From: Lepidodermella squamata
Lineage: Eukaryota > Animalia > Gastrotricha
Direction of reading: 5' to 3'
Length of the DNA: 64,000 nt
Assembly (NCBI GenBank): GCA_047495785.1
Contig: JBLDXI010000046.1
Span: forward strand, 248,001 to 312,000
Below, piece after piece: positions 38,740 through 58,566 of the stretch (within the stretch, counting starts at the first letter, position 1; every line of letters starts with the position of its first letter). A program made the position numbers and the translations under genes. The notes beneath the pieces were generated by a model. The model saw only the letters and a program-made list of their open reading frames with translations. It made no database searches and was not told where the DNA came from.

Positions 38740-39060
38740 CGGTGTCCTCAAAGGCGTCATCACAACTTAAACCCTCCAGGATATCACGCAGCAGTTGCCG
38801 ATGGGCTGGTTTATGCTTTTGGCTGTTTTCGCCCTTGAAAAACTCGAAAAGCATCATCTCCGCATTCGAAATATTCCTTCTGTGAAAAAGGAACAATCTG
38901 TCTTTGTCATAAAGATCGACGTCATTTGACGTTCTTAGACGAGGCAATAAGACCAGACATGGTAGACCAGGCAAGCTTGCAGTCAGGTTCAAGTAGAGAG
39001 CTTTTTTTAAACTCGACAACATTGTACTCAAAAGTGTTCACCGGACAAATGACGAACCAC
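38740..39060 (-). pseudogene. Relic of a TIR-NB-ARC-ANK paralog
   Basis: DLYDKDRLFLFHRRNISNAEMMLFEFFKGENSQKHKPAHRQLLRDILEGLSCD is nearly identical to 43040-43205 of the intact gene. Confidence 0.85.
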
Positions 39061-39176: not shown

Positions 39177-40586
39177 TTAATAGCGATTCGTCATGATGTA
39201 CAAATAGATGACATCGCAAACGAAAGCCGTAGTGCCGCAAATGCCCGCCATATAAAGGTCGAGAATTCGAATTTTCGATAAACTTAAATGACCATATTTG
39301 CCGTTTCTGGTTTGCTTATCTACAGCTATCGGCAGAATTATGAGGGAATAGAGTGTTAAGATGATGCCGCTGATGAATTTTATGACAACTATGTAGACCA
39401 GGTAGACAGGTTCCGAAGTGTGAGGAATTATTGAGAAAACAAGTGTTAGCAGGACTGAATTTCCCAATACGGCTGTGATTGCAAATGAAGCTCTAAAAAA
39501 AGAGGAAACAAGGAACATAAATAAAACATAACGAAACCTCCTCAAACTTTCATGGTATAATTTTTAAAAATTGGGAAATTTATTGAAAATGATTAAAAAT
39601 GAAACTTCAATTTAAATATTTGAATTTTGATTCGAGAATCAATTTATTTGATTTCACTTGAAAATTGAGTAATTTTTAAAATTTTGATATTCATATTTAG
39701 GAATTTCAAATAAATTTGTAGAGTTTTATTTCAACCTGTCTGGCAGTTCCGGAGGCATGGCCAGGCTGAAAACTTGAAGCAGATACGTAGCCATAGTTGG
39801 TATCAAAATATTAATGATGTAATACAAATATTTCCGCTTCAGACTTATCGTAAACTGCAACTGGGTGTATTGAATTCCGTTTTCATTTGTGTATGTTATT
39901 TTCTCGAAATTCAATGAATCAGAAAGTTGATCATCCGCAAATTTCCAGATCTCTGAATTGTCTAAAATTCCGCTTGAATTCATCGCTTCAAGCGGGCGAA
40001 AACTGCGAGCTGAAAAATTGACCAAAATGTCAGCTTGATTCGGCTCGAAAATCAGCGTGCAGTCCAGCTTATCGAAAGGAAACATCTCAAATTTGAACGA
40101 CTGGCATTTCGTGTCAATGCGCCGAATTCCTACGTACAGACCACGTGGCGGTGTCGAGATAGAAAATGGTGTTATCGTTATCTCATCGCCGCCTTCGATA
40201 TCGAAAGGCAGAGGATTCTTCACCGCGTTAAGGTGGCTCAGGTAAGGATGCCAGTAACTTTTAGCTTCAACGTAAAATTGAACTTTATCGAGACCATATT
40301 TATAGTTGCACAATTTAGCGAGTTCCGGGTGACTTTCGGCCATTTGCCAGCAGTTCATAACGGGGCATGGGTAGTTCCATGAGAATATGAAATAGACAAA
40401 AATTGACAGAGTTTTCGCGAGATCGTTGATTTCGAGTATTCGAACAAGTAGTAGGGTCAAGTCTATTTTAAATGGATCACGAAATTCGTTGAGAACTCCA
40501 TTTTCAAAGGGCAAATTAAGGACTCGAACGGGCGGGCAGGCATTTGCGAATGACGCCTCGAGGGCTTCGGAAGCTGTTGTATTCAT
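39177..40586 (-). CDS. Atypical Cys-loop ligand-gated ion channel subunit 2, 2 exons; true start uncertain
   Basis: Close paralog of subunit 1 with the same motifs and intron position. Confidence 0.82.
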
Positions 40587-41487
40587 CGTGTTGAAAAAAA
40601 ATCACACAGCTGATTCGGTTTTATTTGAGCAGTGGAATAGCATGCTGCTATGTTTTCTGCAAATACGGCAGTACAGGAAATGAAATATTATTGAAAACTT
40701 GATTTTGGTTTATTTGATGACATTTTATTTTATTTCATTTCAATCGCGTTTTCTATCGTTTTAATTGCAAATTCGTTGCTGACTTCGGAAGTTCCCATAA
40801 GTTTGATTAACGCATCAAAGGCTAAGGTTTGGGTTATTTCCATAGATTTAATACAAACGAGAATAAACCGGGAATTTGTACCTTGCGAATTGAGCCGGGC
40901 CCAACCTCTCGGATCCTAAGAGATATGATAGTATTAAGCCCTTAATCCCGTTCATTTCGCAGCAAGCTCAAAATTTTTTAACACAGTCAGGGCCCAGAGC
41001 TCAGGGATCTAGATCCAAATACTGGATCCAGATTTTGGATCCAATAATCCATCGCCTAATGAGATCATCGCGTGCCCTTTAATCGAAAAAGCCGAAACAA
41101 ACAAAAAGCTTTTTATTCTGCCATTTTTTTCCCAAGTAAAATAATTAATGACTTCTACGTGATGACACTATTGTTACAACTTCAGACGAGAGAACGCGGT
41201 AGCGGTATTGTTAGACACAGCAGAAGATGGGCGGCTAGCAAAATATCTAAAAGAAAGCATACCGGATGAGATGGAAGACCACAGAAAGTAGACAAGGGAA
41301 AAGCAGCAGATGGCCTAGCAACAACGCTGTTCCAGCGAACTCGATCCTCAAGACGGAAATGCATACGGCTCGTAGACAGTAGCAAATTTCAGCTAAGTGT
41401 TGCGCGGTACGGTGGCCGGCAAACAACCGAGCGGAAGCATGAACGATTTTGCCCCCTCGGAAGTTTCCATGCTGTGTATCGTTGGCA

Positions 41488-44400
41488 TTAAATACGTTTC
41501 AGCTCAAAATCTCGCAAGAATTGAACAACTTCGATCTGGTCATTTTCAGCAGCTATCGAGAGCGGGGTTGTGCCATCGTTGTCAGCCATAGAAACAGTTG
41601 CTGGAGCTTTCTCTGCCAGGAATCGAACAACTTCAATGTGGCCATTTTGACCAGCTATCCAAAGCGGCGTTACGCCATCCTTATTAGCCAAAGAAACCGT
41701 TGTCGGAGCCTTGTCTGCCAGGAATCTAACGACTTCGATGTGACCGCTTTCAGCAGCAACAAACAGCGGGGTTGTGCCCTCGTTATTCGCCATAGAAACC
41801 GTGGATTCTGCTTTGTCTGCTAAGAATCGAACAATCTCGATGTGGCCATTTTCAGCAGATATCGAGAGTGGCGTTCTGCCATCGTTATTACACGCGGAAA
41901 CCGTGGTTGGTGCCATGATTGCCAGAAGTCGAACAACGTCGATGTGGCCATTTTGAGCTGCTATCCAAAGCGGCATTATGCCATCGTTGTCAGCCATAGA
42001 AACCGTGGTTGGTGCTTTATCCGCCAGGAATCGAACAACATTAATGTGGCCATTCTGAGCCGCAATCCAAATCGGGACTGTGCCGTTTTTATTAGCCATA
42101 GAAACCGTGGACGGTGCCTCGGCTGCGAGGAATCGAACAATCTCGATGTGGCCATTTTCGGCAGCAATTAACAACGGGTTTGTTCCGTTGTTTTTAGCCG
42201 TAGTTACCAGGCTTGGTGCTTTGTCTGCCAGGAATCTAACGACTTCGAGGTGGCCATTTTGAGCTGCAATCCAAAGCGGCGTTGTGCCGTTTTTATTAGC
42301 CGTGGATATTGTGGTCAGGGCTTTGTCTGCCAGGAATCGGACAACCTCGATATGACCATTTTCAGCGGCTATCGAGAGCGGGGTTGTACTGTCATTGTCA
42401 AGCGTGGAGACCGTGGATGGTGCTTTCTCTGCCAAAAGTCGAACGACGTCGATGTGGCCATTCTCAGCTGCTAAAAAGAGTGGCGTCATGCCGTCGATGT
42501 CCCTCGAAGATAGGGTATCACGTGACTTTCCAGCTGCGAATTCTATTATTTTTCTATCACCTAGTACAGCAGCAATGCCCACAGCTGTGCGTGCCTCTGC
42601 TAGGCTGAAATTGCGTTTCACTGCAGCTAAATCACGGCCTATAACCGATCTAATAAACTGTGACGTATCCTTGCTATTAATTAGGACAGCCACATTTCTT
42701 CTCGCTTGATATCTCCAGTAGTGGCCATTAAAGAAGTTCACTATTTTGTCTCTCTCGTGCTTCAGCAGCTCTAATTCATCGTCGTTCCAAATTTGCATCA
42801 AACATGCCAAATCATTGTGGTCGGCTAAGCATTTTATGTGGCTTTGATATCGCGCTTCGTCGCCCTGCAGTCTTGCAAGCATCCATGCAATCAGACGGTA
42901 GGAATGATGTGTTCCGTACATTTTAAACTCATCCTCTGCACCTCGAATGAAATTGTCTTCCCATTCCAAGCAATAGAGGAAATGAATGAAAGACTTTCCC
43001 TCGCTTCTGCTTGTATACGTGCATACTTCTAACAGTGCATCGCAACTTAAGCGTTCCAGGATATCACGCAGCAGTTGCCGAAGGGCTGGTTTATGCTTTT
43101 GGCTGTTTTCGCCCTTGAAAAACTCGAAAAGCATCATCTCTGCATTCGAAACATTCCTTCTGTGAAGAAGGTACAATCGGACTTTGTCATACAGATCGGC
43201 GTCATTTGGGGCGGTTATCTTGAATTCTTGGGCAGCTCGTCGAAAACCAGCTTCCCAAAGAAGTTGATGCACGGACGAGAGCTCATGATCCCCGCCAACA
43301 GTTCGTATAACAGCGCGCTGATCAAAGGCATTGAACACGTCCTTTGCCCTAAGCTTAGGTGCTAGTTGGCGCCATAACATTGCCAGATTTTCGCTGGAAA
43401 TTAGAGCATTTGGCGCGAAGAGAAGGAAGGCATAGAAGCACTGCCTATAGTCGTCTCCAAGTCGGTCGAGAGAAAACTGCAACAGACTATCGACAGTTTG
43501 TTCTTTGAAACGGGAATCGCCACCGGTCAGAGTAGTATCAAGGTCGTTGGTCTTTTGATGGACCACTTCTTCATACTCCTCGTCCCAATTGTAATTTCCG
43601 AACATGAAGCGATTGGCGATGAGAGACATGATCAGAGGCAAACCACAGCACATTTTCGAAAGGTTTGCTATCTTTTCTTCAGCGTTCGCCTTGAGTTTCT
43701 CCTTCAACTTGCAAGTTCTTTCGAGAAATCGTTCGATCGCTTCATTCGTGAGACTGTCGATCTTCTCCAACTTGTAGATGAGCTGTCGCTGTTGCATTAA
43801 AATCGCAAATGGGTCACGAGTAATGACACAGCAGGCCATTTCTGATTGCTCTTGAATGAAGAAGCGAAGCAATTCCACGTTGAACATGTCATCAAGGACG
43901 ACCAATACACGACGGCGCTTTTTCTCGCGAAAATACTCGCTGATATGAGATATTTCCGATCCAGTAAAGTCCGCTGCTGCTTTCTTTGCCAGAGCTAATA
44001 GACTTTCACGGAATTCTTTCTTGGCTGAGTCATCAAATGATAATCCTTGCCACTTGAAACACTGAAGCCAGAGAACAACCGTTGGCGATTGCAGCCCTCT
44101 TGGGATCGATTCGCTGCGTAGCAATTTCGCCATCAAAACAGACTTGCCTACTCCCCCCTCGCCAGCTACAACCAGAATGCCATTATTGCCTAGTTAAGAC
44201 TTTTATTAAGCTGGATCGAAGAAATAAAAATATTTACCTTTTGCTGATTTATTGCAAATTTCGATTAGATGAGTCATCAATTTGGCTTCCAGTTCATCCC
44301 GCTCAAAGTAGTTCGAGATGCTGATAGGTAAGTTTGAAGAGTAGAACCGATTCGAAACGACTGCTTTCTGGGCAGGCATCTCCAGTATCAGTCGGATTTG

Positions 44401-45151
44401 CTGACAAACATCATTAGCATCGTCGTGGAAGTGCATGGCCTCCGTGCGCAAGAAGACTCTAAGTAAATTTCCGAGGTTTCGAGACTCATCGAGTCGGACA
44501 AAGTCATCTTCCAGATTGACGAGGAGTAATTTCTTTTTCTTGAAGATGGCATAGTCAAATTCTTTAGCAGAATTGGAACCTGCTCTAAGGTATGGTTCGC
44601 AGAGGAAGCAAACAACGATATCAGCCCAGTCTACTTTCTATCGTTGCGAACATGATAAGTGATAAATCTTAGAAGAGACTGAAAACTTGCCTCAATCATC
44701 GCCTGATCGAGATCGCCGCAGATTTTATGAATATCTAAAAACACATCGAAGTCAGGCTGTTGGCTGAGATATTCATCTGTGAGGTTTCGAACGTCAGCTT
44801 CGCGATAACTCCAAGAATAGCTCACAAAAACACGAGCTTTTTTGGCAGAGGCAGCTGATTCTGGCGAAGAGTTCGCCGATTCTTGAATAGGTCGCTGTAA
44901 ATAATAAGGTTTTATTATGCAAAATTTATGACATCAACTTCCTGAACTCATACTTTTTGTGGAAGAGAAGTCTTCTTTGTTGGCAGTATCGTTTTTTTCT
45001 TTGAAATAAAATGATGATGTGTATGATTTGATTTTGACGAGTCTTTCACCCCATCTAAAACTTGAGGGGTGGTTTGCTGTAAAGTGACACCATTTTGTAG
45101 CTAATGGACCAAATTAGTATGGAAACCTACTTTCTCCGAAGATTGTTTCAT
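41488..45151 (-). CDS. NLR-like STAND receptor: TIR - NB-ARC - ankyrin repeats
   Basis: TIR: RVFVSYSW...VFLDI...AMIE/KVDWADIVVCFLCEPYL..SNSAKEFDYA (exons 44894-44691 and 44637-44238). Final exon 44189-41488 carries Walker A GEGGVGKS, Walker B VLVVLDD, ITR, GLPL, MHD-like VHQ and ten 34-aa ankyrin repeats. The short 5' exons from ATG 45151 are phase-compatible but less certain. Confidence 0.88.
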
Positions 45152-45949
45152 GTTACTGATATAGGAACTTAGAAACCCACCAACAATCAGGTTATATTAT
45201 ATACGTAGTCTTCTTAAAACGTTAAAACCGCTTGAAATAAAACGCTGGTATTCCACGGGGGCAATCTGAACTTTCGATGGATGAATGGTTATGGAGAAAT
45301 GGCCTTCCATTCACTTAAAGAATACAAAAGGAAGGCTCACGTCGAATAGAAAAAGTAAACTCCCTCACTGGCAACTCGATGAAAGGGGTAACATGAATAT
45401 ATACAATTTTAATGCCGCAACTTTAATGCGATTCTTCAGTGCCTTTTTTTATTTCTTCAAGTGAAAGAAAACCAATTTTTCCATCACCATTTATCTTTCA
45501 ATCCAAAGTTAAATTGGCAGACATACGGCTGACCATCACTTGCGGGTATTTTCAGCCCGGAATTTATCGGGCCAAAGGGTCCCCCTGTGATTGTTTTGGG
45601 GTTTTATTGCCTCCCTAGTTACCGGGGGGCCTTGATACAATGCGTTAAGTGTGTCGGAAACTATGTAGAAGTAGGAGCTTTTACTCTATGTGTCAATCCC
45701 AAGATATCATACGTTTTCAGTATCATGAGTCTTCCCAGTTGTCGCTGTCGATTCCACTGACGAGTGTTCATCCATTTGTTGCTTTTAAATCGACAAAGTA
45801 GGTATACCCAATAATATAAATTGCGAAACTTACTTGCATCGCACAATTTCCCATGGATAAAAAACAGATATTCTTTTCTGATAACGAATTGTTGCAACTC
45901 AACAGAAATCGTACCAAAAATCGAGAACTTACGCTTATTAGGTTTGAAC

Positions 45950-46150
45950 AACCCGGCGGATTATCACTAGGCGTAGCGAAGCAACATAAGCCAGGAACAC
46001 TAACAGCAAACCAACAAAGCAATTGCAATCATTTCTAAGTTTGGCATCATCGATTGGAGTATCTGCCTATGCACCGAAACCACGTATCCTAGAAACATCC
46101 GCTTTGTGGAAAAATAATTAATGAGGACTAAATCGATCGATACGCTATAC
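45950..46150 (-). pseudogene. Decayed paralog of the 5' exon region of the ankyrin-only gene
   Basis: acaaagcggatgtttctaggatacgt...gatgccaaacttagaaatgattgcaa aligns with 49415-49490; contains stops. Confidence 0.55.
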
Positions 46151-46361
46151 GCTAGCTCCAATAGCATGCTGAAAGTTGTGGATATAGGCGTGGAAAGGTG
46201 TGGATCTGAAAAATTAAATGGTGGAAGAATTCCATTCGACTTGTTTCACATTTGAATACAAACGCAATTTCTTTTATCTTGAGAGTTCAATAGAGTAGAA
46301 AATCTGAACCAATTAATCGAGGCATGACGGCAGCCAGGATGGAATAATTTTATTCTATTTA

Positions 46362-46458
46362 CAGGGTGTTCAAGAAATAATAGGTAGTTATAAATAGCAT
46401 TGCTACTTTTGGCACGCGCTTTAGCTTAACAACTACCTATTATTTCTTGAACACCCTG
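46362..46458. mobile_element. Tc1/mariner-type mini-MITE (97 bp)
   Basis: ta|cagggtgttcaagaaataataggtagtt ... aactacctattatttcttgaacaccctg|ta, perfect 28-bp TIR. Confidence 0.8.
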
Positions 46459-46789
46459 TACATGTTTTTTTTAATTCGGACTCGAAAATACCCCCTAGTT
46501 CGAGCATCCTACTTCGCGCACTGGCTATAGAGGCCAGACTCGCATCCATTCATCGTCGGGAAACTTGGGAAGATTTAATTAATCCTTGAGTCTAATCCCT
46601 CGGCTCTGTAGTACTCGGCCTAGTACTGCTCTGTAGTACGTCACATTCAAAGCGGCAGCCAGGTTCCGATTGCAATAGTCAATGATCATTTCAAGTAGTA
46701 AGTATTACTTTGATCCGGGCGCTGATTGGTGAATTTATTGTTGCTCCGCGATCTGCGATGAAACCATTTTGTCGTGCGATGTTCACCAT

Positions 46790-46875
46790 GAGATGCCCCT
46801 TGGACCGTATCGTGATATGAGCTTCGATAAATTAGTCTTTTTGTGAACCGTTTTTGTACCGATTCCATGTCATAT
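46790..46875 (-). pseudogene. CR1/L2-like LINE 3' fragment
   Basis: DMESVQKRFTKRLIYRSSY...GASH matches DKLEAVQARFTKRHLYRSDY...GASY of the element at 51063. Confidence 0.6.
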
Positions 46876-47485
46876 GTAGTAAACTCCGTAGTAAACTCCG
46901 TAGTAAACTCCGTAAAAACACTTGTTGCAAAAAGTTTTATGGATCGCACGACTGAATGTTTCATCTGAGGGTCATAACAACGATCGATTGATCGATTGAG
47001 TTTGGTTGGTTCGATGAAATTGTATTATACCGTTAACATTTGATAATGGGGTGTGGCGAAATTGTTGACATTATGAGACTTTGATGACGCTTGAGGCTTT
47101 CAAGATCACTGAACGAGCAGTCGAACGATATTAAAAAGAGGTTGAAAGTCATCAGGGTTCCTGAGAAAATAGGAATGTTGCTAAATACGAAAAATACAAG
47201 CATTACAAATGTTCGTTTTTTATTGCATCAATAAATAATTCTTCGGTTCATAAATTTGGATGCTCACTCAAATGCGCCTTCCGAGTAATCTGAGGCGAGG
47301 AATCTCTCCAGATCTTTAAAGTCAGGATGCAGCCTGGCCTCGAATCGAGGATTCCCAGCTGAAATTTTGCCATCGAAAGTAATTATTATGAACACGTCAC
47401 GTTTTTTCTGGGTGCCCCGAAGCCACTGCGTCCTGGTACGTCTCATGATCGAATAAACTCTTATATTTTACTGTGTTCGTTAGCA

Positions 47486-49400
47486 TTAAAGTCCTTTTAG
47501 GTATCTAACAATTTTGTCATAGCCATATTCAGCAGCTTGTGAAATCGGCGTTTCGCCGTATTTATTAGCAGCGGAAACTGTGGTTGGCGCCTTTCCTGCC
47601 AGGAATCGAACAACTTCGATGTTGCCACTTCCAGCAGCCATCAGAAGTGGGGTTGTGCCATTGTTATCCGCCATAGAAACTGTCATTGGTGCTTTCTCTG
47701 CCAGAAATTGAACAACTTCGATGTTCCCCTTTCCAGCAGCTATGAAAAGTGGCGTTTCGCCTGCGTTATCAGCCGCAGAAACCGTTGATGGAGCCTTATC
47801 CGCCAGGAATCGAACAACCTCGATGCAGCCAATTCTAGCAGCCATCCAAAGCGGAGTTTTTCCTTCGTTATCAGCCACCGAAACTGTAGCTGGCGCTTTC
47901 TCTGCAAGGAATTGAACAACTTCGAAATGACAATTTTGAGCAGCTATCAAAAGTGGAGTTGCTCTGTTTTTATCAGCCGCCAAAAGCGTAGTTGGTGCTT
48001 TCTCCGCGAGAAATCGAACAACGTCGATGTGGCGTTTTTGAGCAGCCATCCAAAGAAGGGTTCCACCTTCGCTATTGGCCGCGGAAAGCGCAGTTGGTGC
48101 TTTTTCTGCCAGGAATTGAACTACTTCGATGTGCCCGTTTTCAGCAGCTATCCAAAGCGGGGTTTTGCCATTTTTATCAGCCGTGGAAACCGTGGCTGGA
48201 GCTTTTACTGCCAGGAATCGAACAACTTCCACGTAGCCATTACCCGCAGCCATCCATAGCGGCGTCGCGCCGTTCTCATTAGCTGCGGAAACCGTGTTTG
48301 GTGATTTCTCGGCAAGGAATCGAACAATTTCGATATGGCCTTTTCTCGCGGCTATCAACAGCGGCGTCGCGCCAATGTTATTAGCCGTGGTAACTGTTTT
48401 TGGCGCTTTTTCCGCAAGAAATCGGACAACATCAATGTTACCATTTTCAGCAGCCATCCATAGCGGGGTTTCGCCGACGTTATTCACCGCTGAAAGCGTG
48501 TTTGGAGCTTTCTCCGCGAGGAATCGAAAAACTTCGATGTGACCATTTCCAGCGGCTGCCAAAAGGGGGGTTACGCCGGCGTCATTAGCTGCGGAAATCG
48601 TTTTTGGTGCCTTGTCTGCCAAGAATCTAACCACATCGATACAGCCCATTTTAGCAGCGATATAAAGCGGGGTTGCGCCGTCGCTATTTGCCGCAGAGAC
48701 CGTAGCAGGTGCTTTCCCCGCCAGGAATCTAACAACTTCGACGTGGCCATTTTGAGAAGCTATCCAAAGCGGGGTTTTACCGCTGTAATTAGCCGCGGAA
48801 ACCGTAGTCGGTGCTTTCTCTGTGAGAAATCGAACGATTTCAATGTGGCCATGCTCAGCAGCAATCCAAAGCGGGGTTACGCCGTTACTATCAGCCGCGG
48901 AACATGAAGTTGGTTCTTTTCCCGACAGGAATCTAACAACTTCGATTCGACCCATTCTAGCAGCAATCCAAAGCGGTGTTGCGTTTTTGTCATTAGCTGC
49001 TGAAACCGTCGCCGGCGCCTTGTCGGCTAGAAATCGGACTACTTCGATGTGGCCATTTTGAGCAGCTACTAAAAGTGGAGTTTCGCTATCGTAACTTGCC
49101 GTGGAAATTGTGGGTGGTGCTTTTTGAGCCAAGAATTGAACAACTTCGGCGTGGCCGTTTTGAGCAGCAATCCAAAGCGGGGTTTTGCCGTCTTTGTCAG
49201 CCGTAGAAACCGTGGTTGGCGCTTTGTCTGCAAGGTTTTTAACAACTTCGATATTGCCATTTTGAGCAGCGATCCAAAGCGGCGTTCTGCCTTTTTTGTC
49301 ACCTGTTGAATGAAAACAAAATGATTTTTTCAGATGCGAATGCTATCATCTTTAATTCACCCTGTATCGCAGCAATCTCTTCTACGGATTTGCCGGCCAT
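47486..49400 (-). CDS. Ankyrin-repeat-only protein with 18 repeats, 2 exons (49400-49361, 49302-47486)
   Basis: MAGKSVEEIAAIQG spliced through a 58-bp phase-1 intron to 18 tandem 34-aa repeats (TPLWIAAxxGHIEVVRFLAxKAPxTVSAA) of the same family as in the NLR. Confidence 0.82.
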
Positions 49401-49998
49401 GGATCAAACCAAAATGGCGGTTGCAATCATTTTTAAGTTTGGCATTATCGATTGCAGCCTACGTATCCTGGAAACATCAGCTTTGTTAATACATAAATAA
49501 TTCACGAGGAGTCAATCGATTTTTGCGCTAGCTCTCATTGTACAAGGGCAATGCATAAGGGCCCCTTTTCTATTAGGGCACCCACGCTCTTTTACTACAA
49601 AAACTGATGTATAGAATGCCTAGACAGAGAAGATGTACAGTACCCTAAAAAAATGTACAATTTAGTCAAAAGTATTCTTTCAATAGTTCATTCATTGAAA
49701 GTACACGAGTCTCCGTTTATTGATAGTATACCCCCTATGGGGGATATTTTACTCTCAATATATAGAGAGAAAACGGCCTACTGAGAGTGAACACTCAACG
49801 ATCCGACACTCTAAAAGTAACTCAATGTTTAAAAAAAAATCAAAAGAAAGTCAATTTAGTTTAATTAAAGTAAGGCCAAAGCAAAACTGGCCAATAACTT
49901 TTTATTTTGAATTCCAATAAGGCTCATTTCTCATCTCATTTCATGGCATTAGCCCTTTATTCTCACCGCTTCTGCTGACTGAGGTTCATCCAGCTCGC

Positions 49999-50376
49999 CT
50001 ACTTGACCCAGCTCGTGGCGTCAATCCTCGCGGGCCCATTATGGCAACCATTCAGCAGGTAGCACCTGCGCGCGGGTGTGCCCGAGACAGATTTCATGAA
50101 TGTCACGGCTTGACAGCCAGGTTTTGTTGTGCACATAAGTTTGCAGACATCTTCAGTCAACTGCGACGCGCCGCTTATAAGCTGGACTAGATTGGATGGA
50201 TTTATGTTCAAGTTTGTAGTTGTTCGACAATCGCCCACCGCTGCTTTGTAACCTGTCACAGATCAAAAATCGCATTTAATACCGTGGCTATATTTCCCGA
50301 TGAAAAATAACTTACCTGCGGATCAAACGCCGACGGCGAACACCAGAGCAAAGGCGACTGCGAGCTTGTTAGACAT
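49999..50376 (-). pseudogene. Small secreted PAN/Apple-domain gene, copy A (in-frame TGA in the signal exon)
   Basis: MSNKLAVAFALVFAVGV*SA with TGA at 50323-50325 where copies B and C have TGC. The PAN exon C-x3-C-x5-C...CYL..C is intact. Confidence 0.7.
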
Positions 50377-51062
50377 GGCTTGAGTTGAATGGTATGAAGA
50401 AAACGAATATCAAATTTGAAGAATAGAAAATTAAGCGATTAGCGCAATAATTTATAGGTGTTTCTTGTACGGAAACTCTTGCACTAACTAAGGACAGACA
50501 AAACGGCAAACATGCGTGAAGCAGCTGAAGCTGGTACGTGACAAAAAATTCTTGCGCTTAGGGGAAAATATCGAAATGCTCTGCCAATATTAATGAATTT
50601 AACTTAATGAATAATATCTCAAGTGTTCTACTTTGCATGAAGTTAAGCGAATCTTCATTAAATAAAAAAACAAAGAAAAAAGCTGATGCAACAGGCTCTG
50701 TAGCCAGAATACATTTTCGTAGTATGCGAACAAAGGCAACATCGCCGAAAGGTTCTAACCGCCACGTATCAATGTGATAGCGGCAAAGAAACGAAACAGG
50801 TAATTTGCGGATGCGCCACCTAATTTAACTATCATGAAATGAATTCATGCGAGCGAATTCCCTCCTTCAACCGCATCGTGAATTAGTGCAGGTAACTTCA
50901 TCGCAGAAATGCGTTCGGATTTCGGAAAATATATTTTTTTTTACATCAAATTTACTTTTTTCAACATCAAATTACCTTCTCTACCATCAAACTCTTTTTT
51001 CAACAGCAAACTTCAGAAATAATTATTTGATAAGGAAAAATATGCTTTCAAGATGAAGTTGT

Positions 51063-51977
51063 GTGATCAAATCATCGATCACGAAATTATTTGCCGACGA
51101 TACGAAGCTGTATCATGCTATTCGCTGTCTTGCCGATTGCATCGAACTTCAATCAGATCTCGATAAAATCATCGGCTGGCTTGATTCACATGGTTTATCG
51201 GTTAATCCGAAAAAATGCGTTGTTCTCAGTCTTGGAAAGAACACATTTCCCTTTCAGTTCAAAGTGAAAGATGTTGAACTAAACATTGTGGATTCAGTTA
51301 AAGATCTCGGAATTATTGTTGATAAACACCTTACGTTCTCTGAGCACTGTAATGCGTTGTCTACACGTTGCCAAAGGATTAATGGCGTGATATGCAAATC
51401 ATTCGCATCGAAATCTCTCCGCTTAAAAGCGTACAAAACATACACTCTTTCACGGTTAGATTTTTGCCCTTCGGTCTATTCACCGTACTACTTACAGATA
51501 TTGACAAGCTGGAGGCGGTTCAAGCCCGGTTCACTAAACGCCATTTGTATAGAAGTGACTACTATTCATCGATTGACGGTGCCTCGTATTATGAAAGATG
51601 TAAAAAACTAGGACTGTGTCCTCTTGAAATCAGACGCTTTCAACATGACCTTGCGCTATGCCATAAAATGTACCAAGGCTGTGTGGATGCTAGCTTTTCT
51701 ACATTCTTCAAAATATCTTCAAATCCCCGTTTACCAGCTCATGCTGTTGTGATGAAACGATTTGAACATCCGAGCTCTCAGTTCAGCTTTACAAGGCGTT
51801 TGCGCGTAGCGTGGAACCGGCTGCCCTCAAGTATTGTCAATAATTCTCATACTGCGTTTCTGCGATATCTTAAATCTAAATCTTACGACCTCTGAGGTGA
51901 GGCGCCGAGAACTAACCTATTGCTAACTGTTTGTGAAACAAAATGCATAATAAAATCAGAATCAGAATCAGAATCAG
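51063..51977 (+). mobile_element. 5'-truncated CR1/L2-like LINE (RT C-terminal half, one frameshift)
   Basis: LFADDTKLY, LQSDLD, N.KKC, KDLGII, LEAVQARFTK, RR..DL, WN.LP; ends in AATAAA plus an (ATCAGA)n tail. Confidence 0.88.
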
Positions 51978-52254
51978 TGTATTATAAGTGCTTATGACCT
52001 CGGGTGATGAAAGCGGGGCCTAGACTCGTGCCAGGCCAACGAACAAAGGGGGTCATGTCAACAATTGATTTTTGGCGCGCGATTTTTTTGCGCGTGCAGA
52101 AGACATGCGCTGCGCGGGAAAAGTCACTTTAAATACTTGGATTTTTGTTATAATCAATCGGACAATTCATTCTCAAAAGTTAAATTCTAAGTTCTCTAAG
52201 GCAACTTTTTCTCGCTTTATCTCTTTATCTTCATCTTTATCTGATTTGTAAATA

Positions 52255-52683
52255 ATGGAGAAGTTACTCATCAAAACTCCTTCCAACTCGTCTTCATCGG
52301 AATCTGGTACGCCGTCGCCGCCTCCAACTCGCGGGCCAGCCATCAAGTACACCAAGAAGCTCGCGGAATTCCCAAGTAAGGAAGCGGCTAAAGAATGGAT
52401 TAAGAAGAACACGCCGTACAACATCGCAAAACGGTGACGACATCGCCTATTGTTGTCGCTAAATGCGAAAGTCCGGCTACGAACGATGTCAAAACCGGGC
52501 CAAGTTGCTTCTCGACGGCGAGACATGGGTACTGATGACATCCGGGCGAAGCATCGGCACAAGACCACTTCAAAACGGCTTACTTCCCAGCTAACGACAC
52601 CAGTCAAGAAGCGAATCGAGAAATATTTCAAGCGAGGCTTGGGTGCATCGTCTATTGTCGCCAAGCTGAAGCATTGCCCGTAA
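52255..52683 (+). pseudogene. Possible DNA-transposon (MULE-like) N-terminal relic
   Basis: Interrupted ORF with EFPSKEAAKEWI and a later helix-rich basic segment; weak resemblance only. Confidence 0.25.
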
Positions 52684-53154
52684 TTAACAACACACCGCCC
52701 TTACATTGCCACATTTTTGGCACGCGATTTGTTTATTACTTCCTCCTTGTGAGCATACATGTGCTTAATAAAAGCAAATACGGCTCAGCTAAATCACTGC
52801 AAATCGAGCACCTTAAATCAAAATCAATCAAAATCATCCCATCACGATGAAAGTCAATCAAATCAAATCACAGGTAGCTAAAAAGGTATGTAAATCAAAT
52901 CAAATCAAATCAAATCCAAAGCACTGGCAATAATAAAAAAAATGTCGCAGCTGATAGCTGATGCAGGAGCAGAGTTGTCCACGGGTCGAAAAATTGAGGC
53001 CCGGCCCGGCCCGTCAGTAAATATCTCCAAACCCGGCCCGGCCCGGCCCGGCCCGTATAAGAAAAATCACACGAAATTACCACTGTCGGCCAGACGGCCT
53101 TTGACAGTTGACGGGGAACTCCCAGCTCATTAACATGTTGAATTATTCATAATA

Positions 53155-53726
53155 CAGTGCGCCCTCCATAAATGCAACCTCTGTTAATGGAAAACCTCCG
53201 TATTTGCAAGCGATTTTGTCCCCCGTTTATTTTATTTGTTAAAAACTATTTTTCATTAAAATAAAAATTGTTAGTTTGATAATTTTTATTTACGGTGAAA
53301 AATTAGGCGTCGTTAGCAACAAAATTTCAGCGCTGCGGGCAGCTTTCTAGCTTTTTTACTTGACGGTCGCGCGGTGTTATCTCACATCTCACCCAAACAC
53401 CCAACCTCTCGATCTTTACAGACCGTTGTTTTTAATGAAGCTCATTGATATTTCGAATCAACAAAATCGTGCGCACGCGATTTGTCGAGTTTTTGCTTTT
53501 ACAAATACTACAACCCATTCAAATCAATGAATTTGACTAAATTTGTTCCGGCTTATCTCAAAACATGGCTAACCACTAAAATCATCGTTGCCTTAGCAAC
53601 TATGAAAAAAACTTAGCGACGCACTTATGATTCATCGCTAGCTCTTTAACAGCCCTCTCTAACTGCAACCCTCTGTAAATGCAAACGCGTGTCTCCCGAC
53701 CGTTTGCATTTATGGAGGGCGCACTG
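53155..53726. mobile_element. Tc1/mariner-type MITE nested in the Helentron
   Basis: ta|cagtgcgccctccataaatgcaa ... ttgcatttatggagggcgcactg|ta. Confidence 0.85.
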
Positions 53727-53809
53727 TACACAATTGTAGTCTATCGGCCGATCTCATCATGAAAACCATCCGTATGATATAAGAATTTTATTGAGCAAAA
53801 CAATAGAAG

Positions 53810-53958
53810 ATAAAATATGAAGAATTGGAGAGTAGAATAGAATAGAAGAAGACAAAAGATAATAGAGTGCAGAAAGAAGATGATAGAAGATAGAAGAGCG
53901 TAGAAAGAAGAACAGATAGCAGAGAAGATAGAAGAGAATAGAATAGAGAATAGAAGAA
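53810..53958. repeat. Purine-rich (AGAAT/AGAAG/AGAT) low-complexity tract
   Basis: Direct reading; it explains the spurious hydrophobic ORF 53741-53962. Confidence 0.85.
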
Positions 53959-54002
53959 CCACACTAGTTCATCAGCTTTTGTCAGTTTTCGTTTTCATTT
54001 TG

Positions 54003-54260
54003 TCAGGCGATTTCGCCGACTGATTCAATTGCTTCGACGTCAGTCACGACGTGATTGATGAGTTGAATTGATGCCTTTTCGTTTACGAACAGCTGCTTTT
54101 TCTCCCGAAAGGTCTGAAATAGGCTATTAAGTATGCTGACAACCTGCCCATCCTTCGTGATCAACCCCTTTTGTTCACCGAAAACCACCACCGCAATCAT
54201 CTTCTTGTCATCTCGAAGATGGAATCTGTCCGGTTGGGCAGGATCACTGCTCTTCAACAA
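54003..54260 (-). CDS. OB-fold / RPA-like ssDNA-binding domain fragment of the Helentron
   Basis: FHLRDD..MIAVVVFGE.......GQVVSI.N pattern typical of OB folds; lies downstream of the helicase. Confidence 0.45.
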   Translation of the reverse strand: MLKSSDPAQPDRFHLRDDKKMIAVVVFGEQKGLITKDGQVVSILNSLFQTFREKKQLFVNEKASIQLINHVVTDVEAIESVGEIA

Positions 54261-54724
54261 GTTAACAACAAAGCCAGTAACGTTTACTCGGTGTTAACAG
54301 GGATTCGTGCGATATCTGAAACCGGTAACAAGTCAACTTGTTTCTTCTCTTCTTTCTGGTCTTTTTTCACGCGTTTTAAATTGTTCAAACTTAAGCAAGC
54401 AGGTATTCTCGAAGCCAACTGCTGGAATTGATACTCAATTCATGTTATTTAAGTTTGATTTCTCAAAACTTACGTTTGCAAGGCAATTTTGTGCAGGGGG
54501 TGCAAGTTCAGTAACCTCGGGACGCCCAGAAAATTCCAAAAATCGATTCTGAATGAAAGATTAATTGTATAGAATGCATCCTCTCTCTAACAAAACTGCA
54601 ATAACGAGCGGTGAAACTTTTGAACAGGAGCGGCTGATAACTCCTGATGTAGTCTGTCTTCTGTAAGCAGGCTCTCAGGCGGTTGCGCGTTGATCGCCAT
54701 ATTGCACGCCGCCGTGCTCAAATC

Positions 54725-55600
54725 TTAAGCACCTGTTTTTCGGAAAAACTCTTCAATGAGAGCAGTTGAAATGCTCTTCAGTCGCTCGTCCTCTGCGAGG
54801 AGCCTTGGATCGGGGCTGAAATACTTGTAGTCATCTTCGGTGAGATGATACACGAGCCATAGGCCAAGTAGCGTTCGCACTCTCGACAAGCCAACGTACA
54901 AGCTAGCTTTATCGACCGATAAGAAAGATGGTGGCCTGGGGTCGCCGATGCAGATGGTATCTAAGCTCAGCCCCTGCACCCCAAAGACGGTTGTTCCGAA
55001 GGAAGGCAGGATAGGGTAATTGTTTAAGCCAAAGCTTGTCATCAATCCGTTGATGGGGAGATTGCAGTGATGATATGAGCGCGCAATCGGGACAACTGTT
55101 TCCGGCCATGACAAAGGCAAGCCTGGCCAGCGGGAACCAGGCCTTGCGGTGGGTATGTCAACGAAAATGTTAACAGGCTCGACAAGAGGCACGAGAAAAC
55201 CTTCTGCATGAAAAAAATCTTTCGCTGACGTGCCCTGAGGCCACTGAATATGATAGACCACAGCCTCGGCCCCATTACAGACTCCTCTAGGCAGGCACTG
55301 ATTGGCTTTAAGTCGCACTGGCATTCCTTCGAAAAGCATTAGCATGGGCGGGACATTGCCAGTTTTGTTGTCGGGCTAAGTGACAATTTCCTCGAGATCG
55401 ATAGGGTATTTCGACGTCACACGAGCTGGAATCTTGTATATCGGTTTTCCGATTTTTTCTGATATGAGATTTATAGCAGTTGCGTTAACTGCAAGTCGCG
55501 TTTTATTTTCTGGCGCAACCACTGTGGTATACATAGATCTGTTCCTAAGAGCAGCGTTCAACACGACATCGGGTCCCGATCTGGAATCTAACATTTGTTT
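54725..55600 (-). pseudogene. PIF1-like helicase C-terminal fragment
   Basis: APEN.TR..VN, GMPVRLKAN..GVCNG, YPILPSFGTTVFGVQGLSLD, LYVGLSRVR; in-frame stop at 55376-55378 and no Walker A. Confidence 0.85.
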
Positions 55601-56379
55601 GATGCCGTCCGCGATTCCTTTGCGAAAACTGGAGAGAAGGATTATTCGGCCCTGTTATAGGGTATGCGCACTCCTCCAGCACGTGCACAGAGAGCCCGCA
55701 CTGGCTGCTGTCACAGCATGCAACCACTGCGAAAGTGGTTGCAGCTTTCTGATATCTCACTCGGTCTCCCTCGCTTCACTTCTGATGTTTCGCTGTTAAC
55801 TCCTCTTTCGGCATCGATTCAGAAGCCATTCGACGCTTGCGACGGACTCTCTCATTTCGCTTCGATTTTGTCGCTGTCAATTCTTCTTTTGGCATTGGTT
55901 CCACAGTTTCCTGGCGTCTTTTACAGTCTGCAGCGTTGCGCTTCAGCCGACTTTCCTCAGATTTGCTTTTATTTCTAGCGCGGTCTCTAGCATTACGCAG
56001 AAGGCGCTTTGTTTCACCGTCATTTTCATTTCTACTTGCGGCTTTACACTCGAAGGGTCCTGGAGGATGGCATTTTTCAGTAGAATTATCAGTGGGCACG
56101 CGCTTAGTATTAACACTGATTGTTGCAGTGGGCTTAGCGTTACGATGGCGCATATTGATGCCGTTGAAATGATTAATATAACATCAAGCCTATTGAAAAA
56201 TAGGAAGGGATTTGAATGCCCAATGCGCCGAATTATAAATTGAAAACTGGATTTGAATGCCGAATGCGCCGAATTATAAATTGAAAACTCATTTATGGCT
56301 TGTGAAATTGTTTCGGTAGAAGTACGCGCTGTTCACTGATTATGTGCACTGATCATGTTGCACGTCAACCCGTCGCAGT

Positions 56380-56660
56380 TGTTAGTAGATCCTGTTTTTT
56401 AAATGTACACTCATATCCTCCTTGAAACACGCGTTTTTTAAATGTACACTCATATCCTCCTTAAAACACGCGTTTTTAAATGTTCACTCATATCCTCCTT
56501 GAAACACGCACGCGCACACTGTTGTCAGTAGATCCTAAAAGTAGATCCTGTTTTTTAAATGTACACTCATATCCTCCTTGAAACAAGCACGCGCACACTG
56601 TTGTCAGTAGATCCTAAAAGTAGATCCTGTTTTTTAAATGTACACCCATATCCTCCTTGA
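56380..56660. repeat. Minisatellite near the Helentron 5' end
   Basis: Five copies of aaatgtacactcatatcctcctt (minor variants), the later ones in ~79-bp units; a ~41-bp direct repeat also at ~56208-56289. Confidence 0.85.
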
Positions 56661-57357
56661 CGTACGGACACACGTAACGAAGACGCCCCACGACAACGGG
56701 GAGTTCCCCGTCATTAGCATTCCTTCTTCCGTCTTGTTGATCAAAAACTTCAAAGAGCCTTTATTTTTACTCAAAATTGGCATTATATTGATGATACAAG
56801 ATCAAAATTTTACTACGGGAATAACTTAAAACCTTACTATCAAATTTACCGAAAGCAATAGTAAAGAAATCCTAGAAGACGGGTTTTGAAAACCAGACCC
56901 GTACCCGCCCAAACCCGGCCCGGCCCGGCCCGACCCGCGTTAAACCCGGCCCGTGGACAACTCTGTGCAGGAGGTCCTGTAGCCAGCGAAAATGTTCGCA
57001 GTATGTGATATGTGAACAAAGGCGACATCGCCCAAAGGTCGCTAATTAATGTTTGCTTTGTAACCTACACAGATCAAGAATTGCATTGAATAAAATGGAT
57101 ATATTTTCCGACTACGTGATTCACTGTGCATCTGCCTGGCCGCATATTAATCTATCACTGACAACTATTCATTACATTTATAATAACGTAAAGTTATAAA
57201 GAGCTAGCGGCAGCTGGTGGACTCAAACCCCCGACACTGCGATTAATTTGTATCCCCGAATTATTCTGGAGGCCTGAGTTCGATACCCTGCAAGAAAGCT
57301 AGTTTTTTCGCAAAATAAGCTGAAGCTGAACCCTGCGATTTTGCCTACAACGTAAAG

Positions 57358-57412
57358 CCGTCCGATGTGGGGCTGGAACCCATGAACCTGGGATTTAGAG
57401 TCCTATGCATCA
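57358..57412 (-). pseudogene. tRNA-derived relic (tRNA-Lys-like or SINE head)
   Basis: gatgtggggctggaacccatgaacctgggatttagagtcctatgc resembles the reverse complement of a tRNA-Lys 3' half, with a mutated T-loop and no 5' arm. Confidence 0.4.
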
Positions 57413-57859
57413 GATATAAATTAGCGATTCACTTCAACAACGGTCAATTCACTTCAATGCCCGTTTAGGTGTCTTTTAGCTCCTTCCTGAATTATTTGAA
57501 ATATTAGCCGATTTTTCGAAAGTCGATAGGCCAGCCTGATCTAGCATATGAAAGAGGCTACCACTACCCACTACTTAACGATATACTCGATCAACGTTGT
57601 GTCAATTTTCCCGTTTTTTCACAAATAATAATTATTCGATTTTGACTTTAAAATGGCAGCATCCCGAGAAGGGGCGGCTGGAGCGTCTTGATAATCAGAC
57701 CATGCCTGAGAAGACGATAATAATTAGAATCAATCGAAGCACCTATCGAATCGATTATTTCTCTTGCATACTCTTTTATAGGCCATTCAACAATGGCATT
57801 TCCTTATTTATTTCGCCGTTCGCCGTTTGTTGTGGATATAATATTTGAAATTATTAAAA

Positions 57860-58020
57860 CAGTGGTCCGAGTACGGGGGGTAAGGGGGTAAACAAACCCC
57901 CCTGGCGTTCGAAAATTGCTTAAAAACGTGAGGGTCCCCCCTGTTGATTTGCAAATTTAGGTCTAAAAATGCCCGATTTACCCCCCCCCCCCCTCATAGC
58001 TGGACCTAGTCGGAACCCTG
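57860..58020. mobile_element. hAT-type MITE
   Basis: cagtggtccga...tcggaaccctg with near-perfect 8-bp TSD tattaaaa/aattaaaa. Confidence 0.7.
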
Positions 58021-58156
58021 AATTAAAATCGAAAGGAAATCGATTTTATATAATTATAAAATAACGCCAAAGCATTTGAACGAATTAATTTTTATTTTTA
58101 TCAATCTCCGATATGGCTCACTACTCATCTCATCTCATGGCATTCATTCCAACCGC

Positions 58157-58566
58157 TCAATTGGCTCGATAGGGGAGGAACCAGCTCTTGACGCCAATCG
58201 GCGCAGTCACATTAAACCCCATGACATAGCAATTTCTCAGCAAGTAGCACCTGCTGTCGGTGCCGACGGAAGTCACGAACGTGATAGCATTGCATCCTGA
58301 TCTTAATTCGCAGAAACTTCTGCAGGTTTCATCATCCATCAGACGTGCTGAGCGGGTCATTAGCTCGATTAGATTGGGTGGATTTATGTTCACGTTTGTA
58401 CTGTTTGTAGGTACTCGACAATCGCCTGGCAGAGCTTTGAAAGCTTCACAAATCAATAATCGCATTTAATAACATGGCCATATTTCCCGATGAAAAATAA
58501 CTAACCTGCCGAGCAAATGCCAACCACGAACGCCAGAGCAAAGGCAACTGCGAGCTTGTTAGACAT
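58157..58566 (-). CDS. Small secreted PAN/Apple-domain protein, copy B (2 exons)
   Basis: Signal MSNKLAVAFALAFVVGICSA, phase-1 intron, six-Cys PAN pattern (CRSFCELRSGCNAITF...CYLLRNC). Confidence 0.8.

What the first reader, a model, noticed from the sequence alone, without database searches (positions are those of the whole stretch)
47486..49400. Ankyrin array with a conserved framework and hypervariable binding positions, shared with the NLR: a natural DARPin-like repertoire
Seen: 18 repeats here and 10 in the NLR share a 102-bp/34-aa unit within a single exon, with a near-constant framework (GHIEVVRFLA.KAP.TVS.A). Variation concentrates in the beta-hairpin (D/N-x-x-G-x), the residue after TPL (W/L/F/Y/S instead of H) and AA-x-x-G (QN, EN, RM, EH, KM, GN, RK, QK, RI, GK, GS). 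Known: the hairpin and AA-x-x positions form the ankyrin binding face randomised in DARPins. Fungal NLRs with highly conserved internal repeats generate new specificities by repeat shuffling. Inference: the ANK-only gene is a repeat donor, decoy or partner sensor for the adjacent NLR, diversified by unequal crossover or gene conversion.
Basis: partly seen in the sequence, partly recalled or inferred. Interest (0 to 1): 0.85.

Follow-up and report, generated by a model that had tools for sequence, protein, structure and literature searches.

The report
Stand-alone ankyrin gene copied from NLR
This is a real, probably transcribed gene that encodes only the ankyrin "sensor" domain of the neighbouring immune-type NLR receptor family, but its 18 repeats are old and stable and their binding-face residues are conserved, so it is a fixed binding protein and not a shuffling repertoire.

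Summary
The minus strand at 47486-49400 carries 18 in-register 34-aa/102-bp ankyrin units, and the neighbouring NB-ARC gene carries 10. Variation sits at the DARPin-type binding positions: 2.21 versus 0.75 bits, permutation p = 1e-5.

- **The repeats are old.** They share 72.5% nt identity, with pS about 0.55 and a star-like tree.
- **There is no recent exchange with the NLR array.** The best repeat-to-repeat identity is 82% and the longest exact match is 23 nt.
- **The array is stable.** A second copy of the locus on contig C29 has the same 18 repeats in the same order.
- **Selection is purifying.** Between the two copies dN/dS is 0.30 overall. It is lowest at the "hypervariable" positions (0.05-0.22) and higher in the framework (0.34-0.40).

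The N-terminus is homologous to the N-cap of the NLR ankyrin domain, so the gene is a domain-only derivative of the local TIR-NB-ARC-ankyrin family. In the window copy an extra A breaks the frame unless a 58-nt GT-AG intron is spliced. The C29 copy is one continuous 638-aa ORF.

Fungal-like homogenised arrays and unequal crossover do occur in paralogous NLRs, for example a 35-repeat array with 90% aa identity between repeats. Earlier notes of this scan report similar kinase-ankyrin arrays elsewhere in this genome.

The parts
49361..49400 (-). Exon 1 of the window copy: the ATG plus 13 codons and 1 nt. It encodes the first helix of a relic ankyrin N-cap (motif EIAAIQG).
   Evidence: Translation. 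The ATG and this segment are conserved in the C29 copy. The motif is shared with the N-caps of NLR paralogs C29a, C7b and C16b. There are 3 mismatches in 40 nt between the copies, all non-synonymous.
49303..49360 (-). Candidate 58-nt GT-AG intron, which is the degenerate second helix of the N-cap. It contains an A6 run (49325-49330) that is A5 in the C29 copy. Read through, it puts a TGA (49299-49301) in frame with the ATG.
   Evidence: Divergence between the copies is 8.8% plus a 1-nt indel, which is like non-coding DNA. Introns of similar small size flank the NLR exons. No splice joint was seen in the contigs laid, so splicing is inferred and not shown.
47489..49302 (-). Main exon: 17 full 34-aa ankyrin units (unit 1 = 49300-49199, and so on every 102 nt) plus a C-cap unit (47566-47489).
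   Evidence: The AlphaFold2 model of the C29 copy has mean pLDDT 88.5 and 18 helix-helix-short-helix units. Its best structural matches are the 24-repeat ankyrin-B/R solenoids.
47486..47488 (-). Stop codon. In the C29 copy it is a lysine codon, and the ORF ends two codons later.
47208..47485 (-). Probable 3' UTR with AATAAA at 47219-47224. The stretch of about 47228-47458 is not homologous between the two copies.
   Evidence: Sequence. Contigs of run X2 cover 47208-49415 and not the flanking intergenic bins. Searches show the break in homology.
41488..44193 (-). Large exon of the adjacent NLR on the same strand, with its stop 2.3 kb... [see note] It holds the P-loop, NB-ARC, a linker, a degenerate N-cap and 10 ankyrin units (42501-41491). 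The ankyrin-only gene ends 3.3 kb upstream of this exon.
Evidence: Short upstream exons and introns are visible.

Best explanation
The feature is a free-standing ankyrin-domain gene. It arose by partial duplication of the sensor domain (N-cap to C-cap) of the local TIR-NB-ARC-ankyrin NLR family.

Its 18-unit array was built by an old burst of unit amplification. The units then diverged mainly at the canonical ligand-binding positions, and the array has been frozen since. The two genomic copies keep the same units in the same order, and purifying selection is strongest on the binding-face residues.

The product is predicted to be a soluble ankyrin solenoid of about 620 aa with no signal peptide and no other domain. 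It has one long, fixed binding groove, like the 24-repeat ankyrin-B/R domain that holds extended peptide segments.

**Inferred, not shown:** because it is a domain-only copy of an NLR sensor that sits beside an NLR, it most likely acts in trans on that pathway. It could compete for the sensor's ligand or hold a pathway component, as I-kappa-B does relative to the ankyrin tail of p105. It is not a donor of repeats.

In the window copy, translation of the array requires removal of a 58-nt GT-AG intron. This is also inferred.
For: - **Same repeat type only in NB-ARC genes.** All genomic hits with 53% identity or more, other than the two copies, lie in NB-ARC ORFs.
- **N-cap homology.** The N-terminal segment matches the NLR N-cap with the same spacing to the first TPLW.
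- **Old array.** Unit identity is 72.5% nt and pS is 0.55. The tree is a star with no strongly supported branch and end branches of 0.10-0.28.
- **Stable array.** The C29 copy is 18 = 18 units, 97.1% nt identical, with no indel.
- **Purifying selection.** dN/dS is 0.30, and neutrality is rejected at p = 2e-5. Units 1-3 carry 8 nt changes but only 1 aa change, so they are translated.
- **Binding positions are frozen.** The eight most variable positions carry 1 of 24 replacements, against 5.6 expected (p = 0.013). Their pN/pS is 0.05, against 0.40 elsewhere. Among units, pN at those positions equals pS (about 0.5), so the past rate of change there must have been far higher.
- **Fold.** pLDDT is 88.5, and TM is 0.68-0.76 to ankyrin-B/R 24-repeat structures.
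- **Transcription.** Contigs of a probable RNA run, identical to the window copy, cover 47208-49415 and not the intergenic bins. An AATAAA sits at 47219-47224.
Against: - In the window copy the ATG is out of frame with the array, and no spliced contig was seen.
- Run X2 is only guessed to be RNA.
- Many replacements between the copies hit framework residues (G4, G15, position 20). dN/dS is nominally higher than in the NLR array (0.31 against 0.19, not significant, p = 0.27), which would also fit relaxed constraint.
- Nothing shows what the protein binds, or that it touches the NLR pathway.
- Co-retention of the gene pair rests on a single duplication or haplotype split.
Confidence: 0.6

Rival explanations
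1. The ankyrin-only gene is an actively diversifying, DARPin-like repertoire that donates or exchanges repeats with the adjacent NLR by unequal crossover or gene conversion.
For: Variation is concentrated at binding positions. Repeats of the two genes are not cleanly separated in the tree: 5 label changes against 7.7 for shuffles. Unequal crossover and homogenisation are evident in paralogs C29a, C7a and C29b. A Q(CAA)/G(GGA) and W/L dimorphism is shared by several arrays.
Against: The best unit identity between the two genes is 82%. The longest exact match is 23 nt, which is no longer than within the array, and there is no diagonal. pS is about 0.55 between units. Unit number and order are identical in the two copies. 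dN/dS is 0.05-0.22 at the binding positions. The intermixing in the tree reflects a lack of signal, with no strongly supported branch.
Confidence: 0.07
2. It is a decaying by-product of NLR cluster turnover. On this reading it is a truncated duplicate with no function of its own, and the window copy has already lost its reading frame at the 5' end.
For: A frameshift lies in an A-run between the ATG and the array. Exon 1 and the 58-nt segment evolve like non-coding DNA. Framework-breaking replacements occur in both copies, 8 in the window copy and 13 in the C29 copy, departing from the array consensus. The first 31 residues of the C29 protein are predicted to be disordered.
Against: A 605-codon frame is open in both copies. 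dN/dS is 0.30, with neutrality rejected at p = 2e-5, and selection is strongest on the binding face. Units 1-3 show 7 synonymous changes against 1 replacement. The gene is probably transcribed. A GT-AG intron of typical size for this genome restores the frame.
Confidence: 0.15
3. It is an ordinary cytoplasmic ankyrin scaffold that, whatever its origin, now works independently of NLR signalling.
For: This genome holds many long ankyrin-only genes with 34-aa units. The solenoid resembles cytoskeletal ankyrins. The binding face is conserved, as expected for a housekeeping partner.
Against: Its repeat type is otherwise confined to NB-ARC genes. It sits in an NLR cluster next to an NLR in both copies. 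No ortholog was found outside this genome.
Confidence: 0.2

Closest known systems
Fungal NLR ankyrin/TPR/WD arrays with high internal conservation (Dyrka et al. 2014, PMC4986451)
   Same: Both are ankyrin arrays of an NB-ARC/NLR family whose variable residues lie on the concave binding face. In paralogs of this family (C29a, C42, C7a, C29b) there are near-identical units, changes in unit number and hybrid units.
   Different: The gene under study has 66% aa identity between units, against a threshold of 85%. It shows no difference in unit number between copies and no sign of positive selection, and it has no NOD domain. The host is an animal, not a fungus.
Designed ankyrin repeat proteins (DARPins)
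   Same: Both have a consensus-like framework, with diversity at positions 2, 3, 5, 13, 14 and 33. DARPin structures are among the sequence and structure matches.
   Different: The unit here is 34 aa, with an extra residue and a predicted short third helix in KAPxTVS. W replaces the TPLH histidine. There are 18 units instead of 4-6. Diversity lies between the units of one protein and not between library members. Natural ankyrins in general vary at these positions (own knowledge).
Ankyrin-B/R 24-repeat membrane-binding domain (PDB 4rlv, 5y4d, 7tw3)
   Same: It is the best structural match (TMq 0.68-0.76). It is a long superhelical solenoid whose inner groove binds extended peptide segments (entry titles; own knowledge for the binding mode).
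   Different: Sequence identity is 28-31%. The protein here has no spectrin-binding or death domains and is lineage-specific, and its ligand is unknown.
Domain-only regulators derived from signalling proteins (I-kappa-B versus the ankyrin tail of NF-kappa-B p100/p105; CARD-only and PYD-only proteins)
   Same: It is a separate gene that encodes only one domain homologous to a domain of a larger signalling protein.
   Different: No binding or inhibitory activity has been tested. The comparison comes from established knowledge and serves as a lead only.

Membership tests
Ankyrin repeat proteins (Pfam clan Ank) | Tandem units of about 33 aa that match the Ank profiles with the G-x-TPLH-x-AA-x-x-GH register | tested here: met
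   Ank_2 scores E = 1e-180 with 15 stretches. The register is confirmed against ankyrin-1/2 chains. The unit is 34 aa, and W/L replaces H.
Ankyrin repeat proteins (Pfam clan Ank) | Helix-turn-helix solenoid fold | tested here: met
   The AlphaFold2 model has pLDDT 88.5. Foldseek gives E = 4e-29 and TM 0.68-0.76 to 24-repeat ankyrins. This is a model, not a structure.
NLR arrays with high internal conservation (fungal type, PMC4986451) | Units at least 85% identical in aa over at least 100 aa | tested here: not met
   Mean identity is 66% (maximum 77%) in the ankyrin-only gene and 69% in the adjacent NLR. It is 90% in paralog C29a and 84% in C42. The threshold is quoted.
NLR arrays with high internal conservation (fungal type, PMC4986451) | Repeat-number polymorphism between alleles or copies | tested here: not met
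   The counts are 18 against 18 units and 10 against 10 units in the C46 and C29 copies, aligned one to one. Only two copies are available, and no population sample. Paralogs differ: 9, 10 and 35 units, and 12 against 18.
NLR arrays with high internal conservation (fungal type, PMC4986451) | Positive selection at binding-face codons | tested here: not met
   Between the copies pN/pS is 0.05-0.22 at binding positions. Among units pN is about equal to pS, both near saturation. HyPhy-type site tests could not be run.
NLR arrays with high internal conservation (fungal type, PMC4986451) | The array is attached to a NOD (NACHT or NB-ARC) domain | tested here: not met
   No NB-ARC lies between the ATG and the array or in the 550 bp upstream. 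The next gene upstream encodes a PAN-domain protein.
Paired sensor/helper NLR or decoy loci (plant type) | Head-to-head gene pair with a shared promoter | tested here: not met
   Both genes lie on the minus strand in tandem. The ankyrin-only gene ends at 47486 and the NLR lies downstream.
Paired sensor/helper NLR or decoy loci (plant type) | Physical interaction between the two products | not tested
   No complex prediction was run, because no binding claim is made and the prior is low.
Domain-only trans regulators (I-kappa-B-like logic) | Homologous to one domain of the parent, lacking the other domains, and separately transcribed | tested here: met
   N-cap-to-C-cap homology is shown. The gene has its own ATG and AATAAA. 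Transcript-like coverage is limited to 47208-49415. The RNA nature of the run is a guess.
Domain-only trans regulators (I-kappa-B-like logic) | Binds the parent protein or its partner and modulates signalling | not testable with these tools
   This needs interaction and knock-down experiments.

The most novel reading that the evidence does not exclude
This would be a split NLR system in an animal. The free ankyrin solenoid would be a trans-acting sensor, guard or inhibitor for the neighbouring TIR-NB-ARC-ankyrin receptor: a stand-alone copy of the sensor domain whose frozen binding face holds a fixed ligand or a receptor segment. It would sit within a receptor family whose other members diversify by fungal-type repeat homogenisation and unequal crossover.
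Probability: 0.15. Interest if true: 0.7.

Novelty: new variant of a known kind. Interest (0 to 1): 0.4.

Why it matters
This result removes an attractive but wrong reading. High diversity at ankyrin binding positions within one array does not by itself show ongoing diversification. Here the same positions are the most conserved ones between two diverged copies.

It also defines a clean case of a sensor-domain-only gene born from an animal NB-ARC receptor family. Its role as inhibitor, adaptor or decoy can be tested directly.

Finally, it points to where the fungal-like repeat dynamics actually are in this genome. They lie in paralogous NLR arrays such as the 35-unit array on C29, and those arrays are the better targets for population-level work.

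Tried and rejected
- **Fetching longer stretches of the paralogous loci.** The analyses use the 60 loci already held, merged by coordinates.
- **Positional homology between the ankyrin-only array and ten NLR arrays.** No diagonal stood out: the best diagonal means are 0.68-0.78, against array means of 0.65-0.76.
- **Repeat tree.** It was unresolved.
- **Reads.** No contig spans the candidate intron as a joint, and no joints of 102-nt multiples appear in the array. Only contigs were available, so neither absence is informative.
- **Gene conversion between the C46 and C29 copies as the cause of the low synonymous divergence of the array.** This is not needed, because dS of 0.061 is close to the lower end of the non-coding divergence, 0.075-0.14.
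- **Complex prediction of the ankyrin protein with the NLR.** Not run, because no binding claim is made.
- **Joined exon 1 + exon 2 protein of the window copy.** Not submitted to any search. The array exon and the continuous C29 ORF were used by reference instead.
- **Literature search for gastrotrich NLRs.** It found nothing specific.

Full report
**1. What is there**

The window is G000:C46:248001-312000 of a 121-Mb animal genome. Earlier notes of this scan call it a small invertebrate, possibly a gastrotrich. I could not confirm the organism.

On the minus strand an ORF runs from 49302 to the stop at 47486-47488. Cutting it every 102 nt from 49300 gives 17 complete 34-aa units and a shortened C-cap, with no indel. 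Supporting results:
- Tandem Repeats Finder reports period 102 and 17.4 copies.
- Pfam Ank_2 scores E = 1e-180.

The large exon of the adjacent gene (44193-41488, same strand) encodes a P-loop, an NB-ARC match, a linker, a degenerate N-cap and 10 units of the same 34-aa type.

**2. Is the variation concentrated?**

Yes.
- In the ankyrin-only array, mean entropy at the six positions randomised in DARPins (2, 3, 5, 13, 14, 33; own knowledge of the design) is 2.21 bits, against 0.75 elsewhere (permutation p = 1e-5).
- In the NLR array it is 1.31 against 0.66 (p = 0.008).
- The residue after TPL is W/L/F/S/Y instead of H.
- Alignment to ankyrin-1/2 chains confirms the register. It also shows that the extra, 34th residue lies in the KAPxTVS segment.

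An AlphaFold2 model of the C29 copy (mean pLDDT 88.5, pTM 0.77) predicts 18 helix-helix units, each followed by a short third helix in that segment. Its best structural matches are the 24-repeat ankyrin-B/R solenoids, with TMq 0.68-0.76.

**3. Gene model**

The ATG at 49400 is followed by 13 codons encoding a helix with the motif EIAAIQG. Read straight on, the frame hits TGA at 49299-49301, one base out of frame with the array.

A second copy of the locus on contig C29 has A5 where the window has A6 (49325-49330). That copy reads as one continuous 638-aa ORF from the same ATG.

In the window copy a GT-AG segment of 58 nt (49360-49303) restores the frame exactly if it is spliced. Introns of about this size flank the exons of the neighbouring NLR.

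Between the two copies this segment and exon 1 diverge like non-coding DNA: 8.8% plus a 1-nt indel, and 7.5%. Units 1-3 of the array carry 8 nucleotide changes but only 1 amino-acid change. The array is therefore translated from upstream of unit 1.

Splicing is inferred. No spliced contig was seen, and an assembly error in the homopolymer cannot be excluded.

**4. Origin**

The N-terminal segment aligns with the N-cap of the ankyrin domains of the NLR paralogs. It shares the EIAAIQGD-type helix, the AF..K motif, and the same spacing to the first G-x-TPLW.

In the whole genome, every match to the array with 53% identity or more lies inside an ORF that also carries the NB-ARC domain, apart from the two copies themselves. 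The many other long ankyrin-only genes of this genome use a different framework, LAGxFKAxVNxA.

Mean unit identity is highest to the arrays of the local cluster and C42 (0.70-0.76), against 0.65-0.67 for the rest. The gene is therefore a domain-only derivative, N-cap to C-cap, of the local NLR family. No ortholog exists in the 5.8-billion-protein collection, where the best hit is a generic ankyrin at 43-48% identity.

**5. Test of the shuffling or donor model**

(a) Age of the units.
- Units within the array are 72.5% identical in nt and 66% in aa.
- Mean pS is 0.55, which is near saturation.
- The tree is a star with no strongly supported branch and end branches of 0.10-0.28.
- This falls short of the 85% aa identity that defines high internal conservation in fungal NLRs (PMC4986451).

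(b) Exchange with the NLR.
- Mean identity between the two arrays is 71%, and the best unit pair reaches 82%.
- The longest exact match is 23 nt, against 21 nt between the two halves of the ankyrin-only array itself.
- No diagonal of positional homology appears with this or any other NLR array.
- The weak intermixing in the tree (5 label changes against 7.7 for shuffles) reflects a lack of signal and not exchange.

(c) Stability.
- The C46 and C29 loci are colinear from at least window 40036 to 50754, with 7.5-14% non-coding divergence.
- Both ankyrin-only copies have the same 18 units in the same order, with 52 differences in 1817 nt and no indel.
- Both NLR copies have the same 10 units.

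(d) Selection.

| Region, compared between the two copies | dN | dS | omega |
|---|---|---|---|
| Ankyrin-only array | 0.018 | 0.061 | 0.30 |
| NLR ankyrin array | - | - | 0.16 |
| NLR NB-ARC | - | - | 0.14 |

For the ankyrin-only array, neutrality is rejected at p = 2e-5.

The 24 replacements avoid the variable positions:
- Three fall on the six DARPin positions, against 4.2 expected.
- One falls on the eight highest-entropy positions, against 5.6 expected (p = 0.013).
- pN/pS is 0.05-0.22 at the binding positions and 0.34-0.40 in the rest of the unit.

**6. What this implies**

If the binding positions were simply unconstrained, about 20 replacements would be expected at the eight most variable positions between the copies (339 sites x 0.061). 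One is seen.

Yet among the units, pN at those positions is about 0.5, equal to pS. Those positions therefore changed fast at some earlier time. This happened after, or together with, a burst of unit amplification, as the star tree suggests. They have been held fixed since.

That is the signature of a protein whose units have each become specialised parts of one long, specific binding surface. It is not the signature of a library that is still being reshuffled.

**7. Expression**

In the 5.5 kb laid, contigs of run X2 cover only 47208-49415, plus two repeat-derived spots and one end bin. Run X2 is guessed to be RNA.

Several of these contigs are identical to the window copy over 123-163 nt, a length over which the C29 copy would differ at about 4 sites. 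Other contigs carry the C29 variants. An AATAAA lies at 47219-47224.

Run X1 covers all bins, as DNA would. Both copies are therefore probably transcribed as separate mRNAs that do not extend into the NLR. This rests on contigs and on a guessed library type.

**8.

Paralogous NLRs show exactly the proposed dynamics.
- **C29a (C29:3558619-3563406).** It has 35 units at 93% nt and 90% aa identity, many of them identical, with a 12-unit higher-order duplication. Differences are largely at positions 1-3, 9, 10, 13 and 17.
- **C42 and C17.** Their unit identities are 88% and 83% nt.
- **C7a.** It equals C16a plus two extra copies of a 3-unit block.
- **C29b.** It lacks one unit relative to the window NLR, and its first unit is a hybrid of units 1 and 2. 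This is a footprint of unequal crossover.

In these young arrays pN at positions 5, 9, 10, 13 and 33 exceeds the mean pS two- to three-fold. However, pairwise counts within duplicated blocks are not independent. The counts of replacement to synonymous states are 11:6 for C29a, 22:14 for C42 and 30:9 for C17, which do not by themselves exceed the neutral ratio of about 3:1.

The NB-ARC parts of the window NLR, C29n, C29a and C29b are a mosaic of 85-97% identity, which suggests exchange among them.

Earlier notes of the scan report similar near-identical ankyrin arrays fused to kinases elsewhere in this genome. I did not test those.

**9. Verdict**

The proposed mechanism of ongoing diversification, repeat donation and gene conversion is contradicted for this gene.

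The best reading is a stand-alone, NLR-derived ankyrin solenoid with a frozen binding face. Its role as a trans regulator or adaptor of the NLR pathway is an inference by analogy with domain-only regulators such as I-kappa-B. It remains to be tested.

Noticed in passing
L033/L004/L003 (G000:C29:3558619-3563406, + strand): An NLR paralog carries 35 ankyrin units at 93% nt and 90% aa identity, 19 of them unique at nt level. It includes five 33-aa variants and a 12-unit higher-order duplication (units 8-19 resemble units 20-31). This is a fungal-type homogenised array in an animal NB-ARC gene. An assembly artefact is not excluded.
   Followed up: partly
L035/L025/L006 (C7:1480494-1483937) versus L005/L034 (C16:1066839-1069757): Two NLR paralogs are 78% identical to the window NLR in the NB-ARC part. 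Their arrays differ by two extra copies of a 3-unit (306-bp) block, giving 18 against 12 units.
   Followed up: partly
L038/L043 (C29:3536927-3539450): This NLR copy has an in-frame stop in the NB-ARC part. Its array lacks one unit relative to the window NLR, and its first unit is a hybrid of window units 1 and 2. That is a footprint of unequal crossover.
   Followed up: partly
window 42510-44193 versus C29n, C29a and C29b: The NB-ARC regions of four NLR copies form a mosaic. In some 150-nt windows the window copy is closer to C29b than to its positional counterpart C29n. Synonymous divergence in NB-ARC (0.25) is four times that of the ankyrin-only array.
   Followed up: partly
window 45000-50500 in run X1: Contigs identical to the window copy have word depth 44-59. 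Contigs carrying the C29 variants have depth 89-91. This suggests about a 1:2 dose of the two copies, as in a haplotype-specific segment, hemizygosity or triploidy. It is unexplained.
   Followed up: no
window 38747-38935, and C29:3503817, C29:3576812, C29:3598177, C43:49889: Short fragments homologous to residues of about 300-400 of the NLR linker region are dispersed around the cluster and elsewhere. Some carry stops.
   Followed up: no
window 49999-50370, minus strand: A small gene for a PAN/apple-domain protein (Pfam PAN_4 E = 4e-5) lies directly upstream of the ankyrin-only gene.
   Followed up: no
window 50755-59053: About 8.3 kb is present in C46 but absent from the colinear C29 stretch. 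It contains reverse-transcriptase-like ORFs (51063-51895) and high-copy repeats. It is probably a set of transposon insertions.
   Followed up: no
L010-L030 (for example C11:565888-580511, C16:66372-67745, C34:426538-429909): There is a large separate family of long ankyrin-only genes with a 34-aa unit and a different framework (GHxEVVKxLAGxFKAxVNxA). Several of them also have near-identical units. One lies 3.4 kb upstream of NLR C16b.
   Followed up: no
window 47228-47458 versus L002: The stretch just after the stop codon is not homologous between the two copies: about 230 nt in C46 against about 85 nt in C29. The two mRNAs would therefore have different 3' UTRs.
   Followed up: no
position 13 and position 9 of the units in C29a, C42, C17 and the ankyrin-only array: The same two-state pattern recurs in several arrays: Q (CAA) or G (GGA) at position 13, and W (TGG) or L (TTG) at position 9. 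It could reflect old unit subtypes shared across genes, or convergent selection.
   Followed up: no
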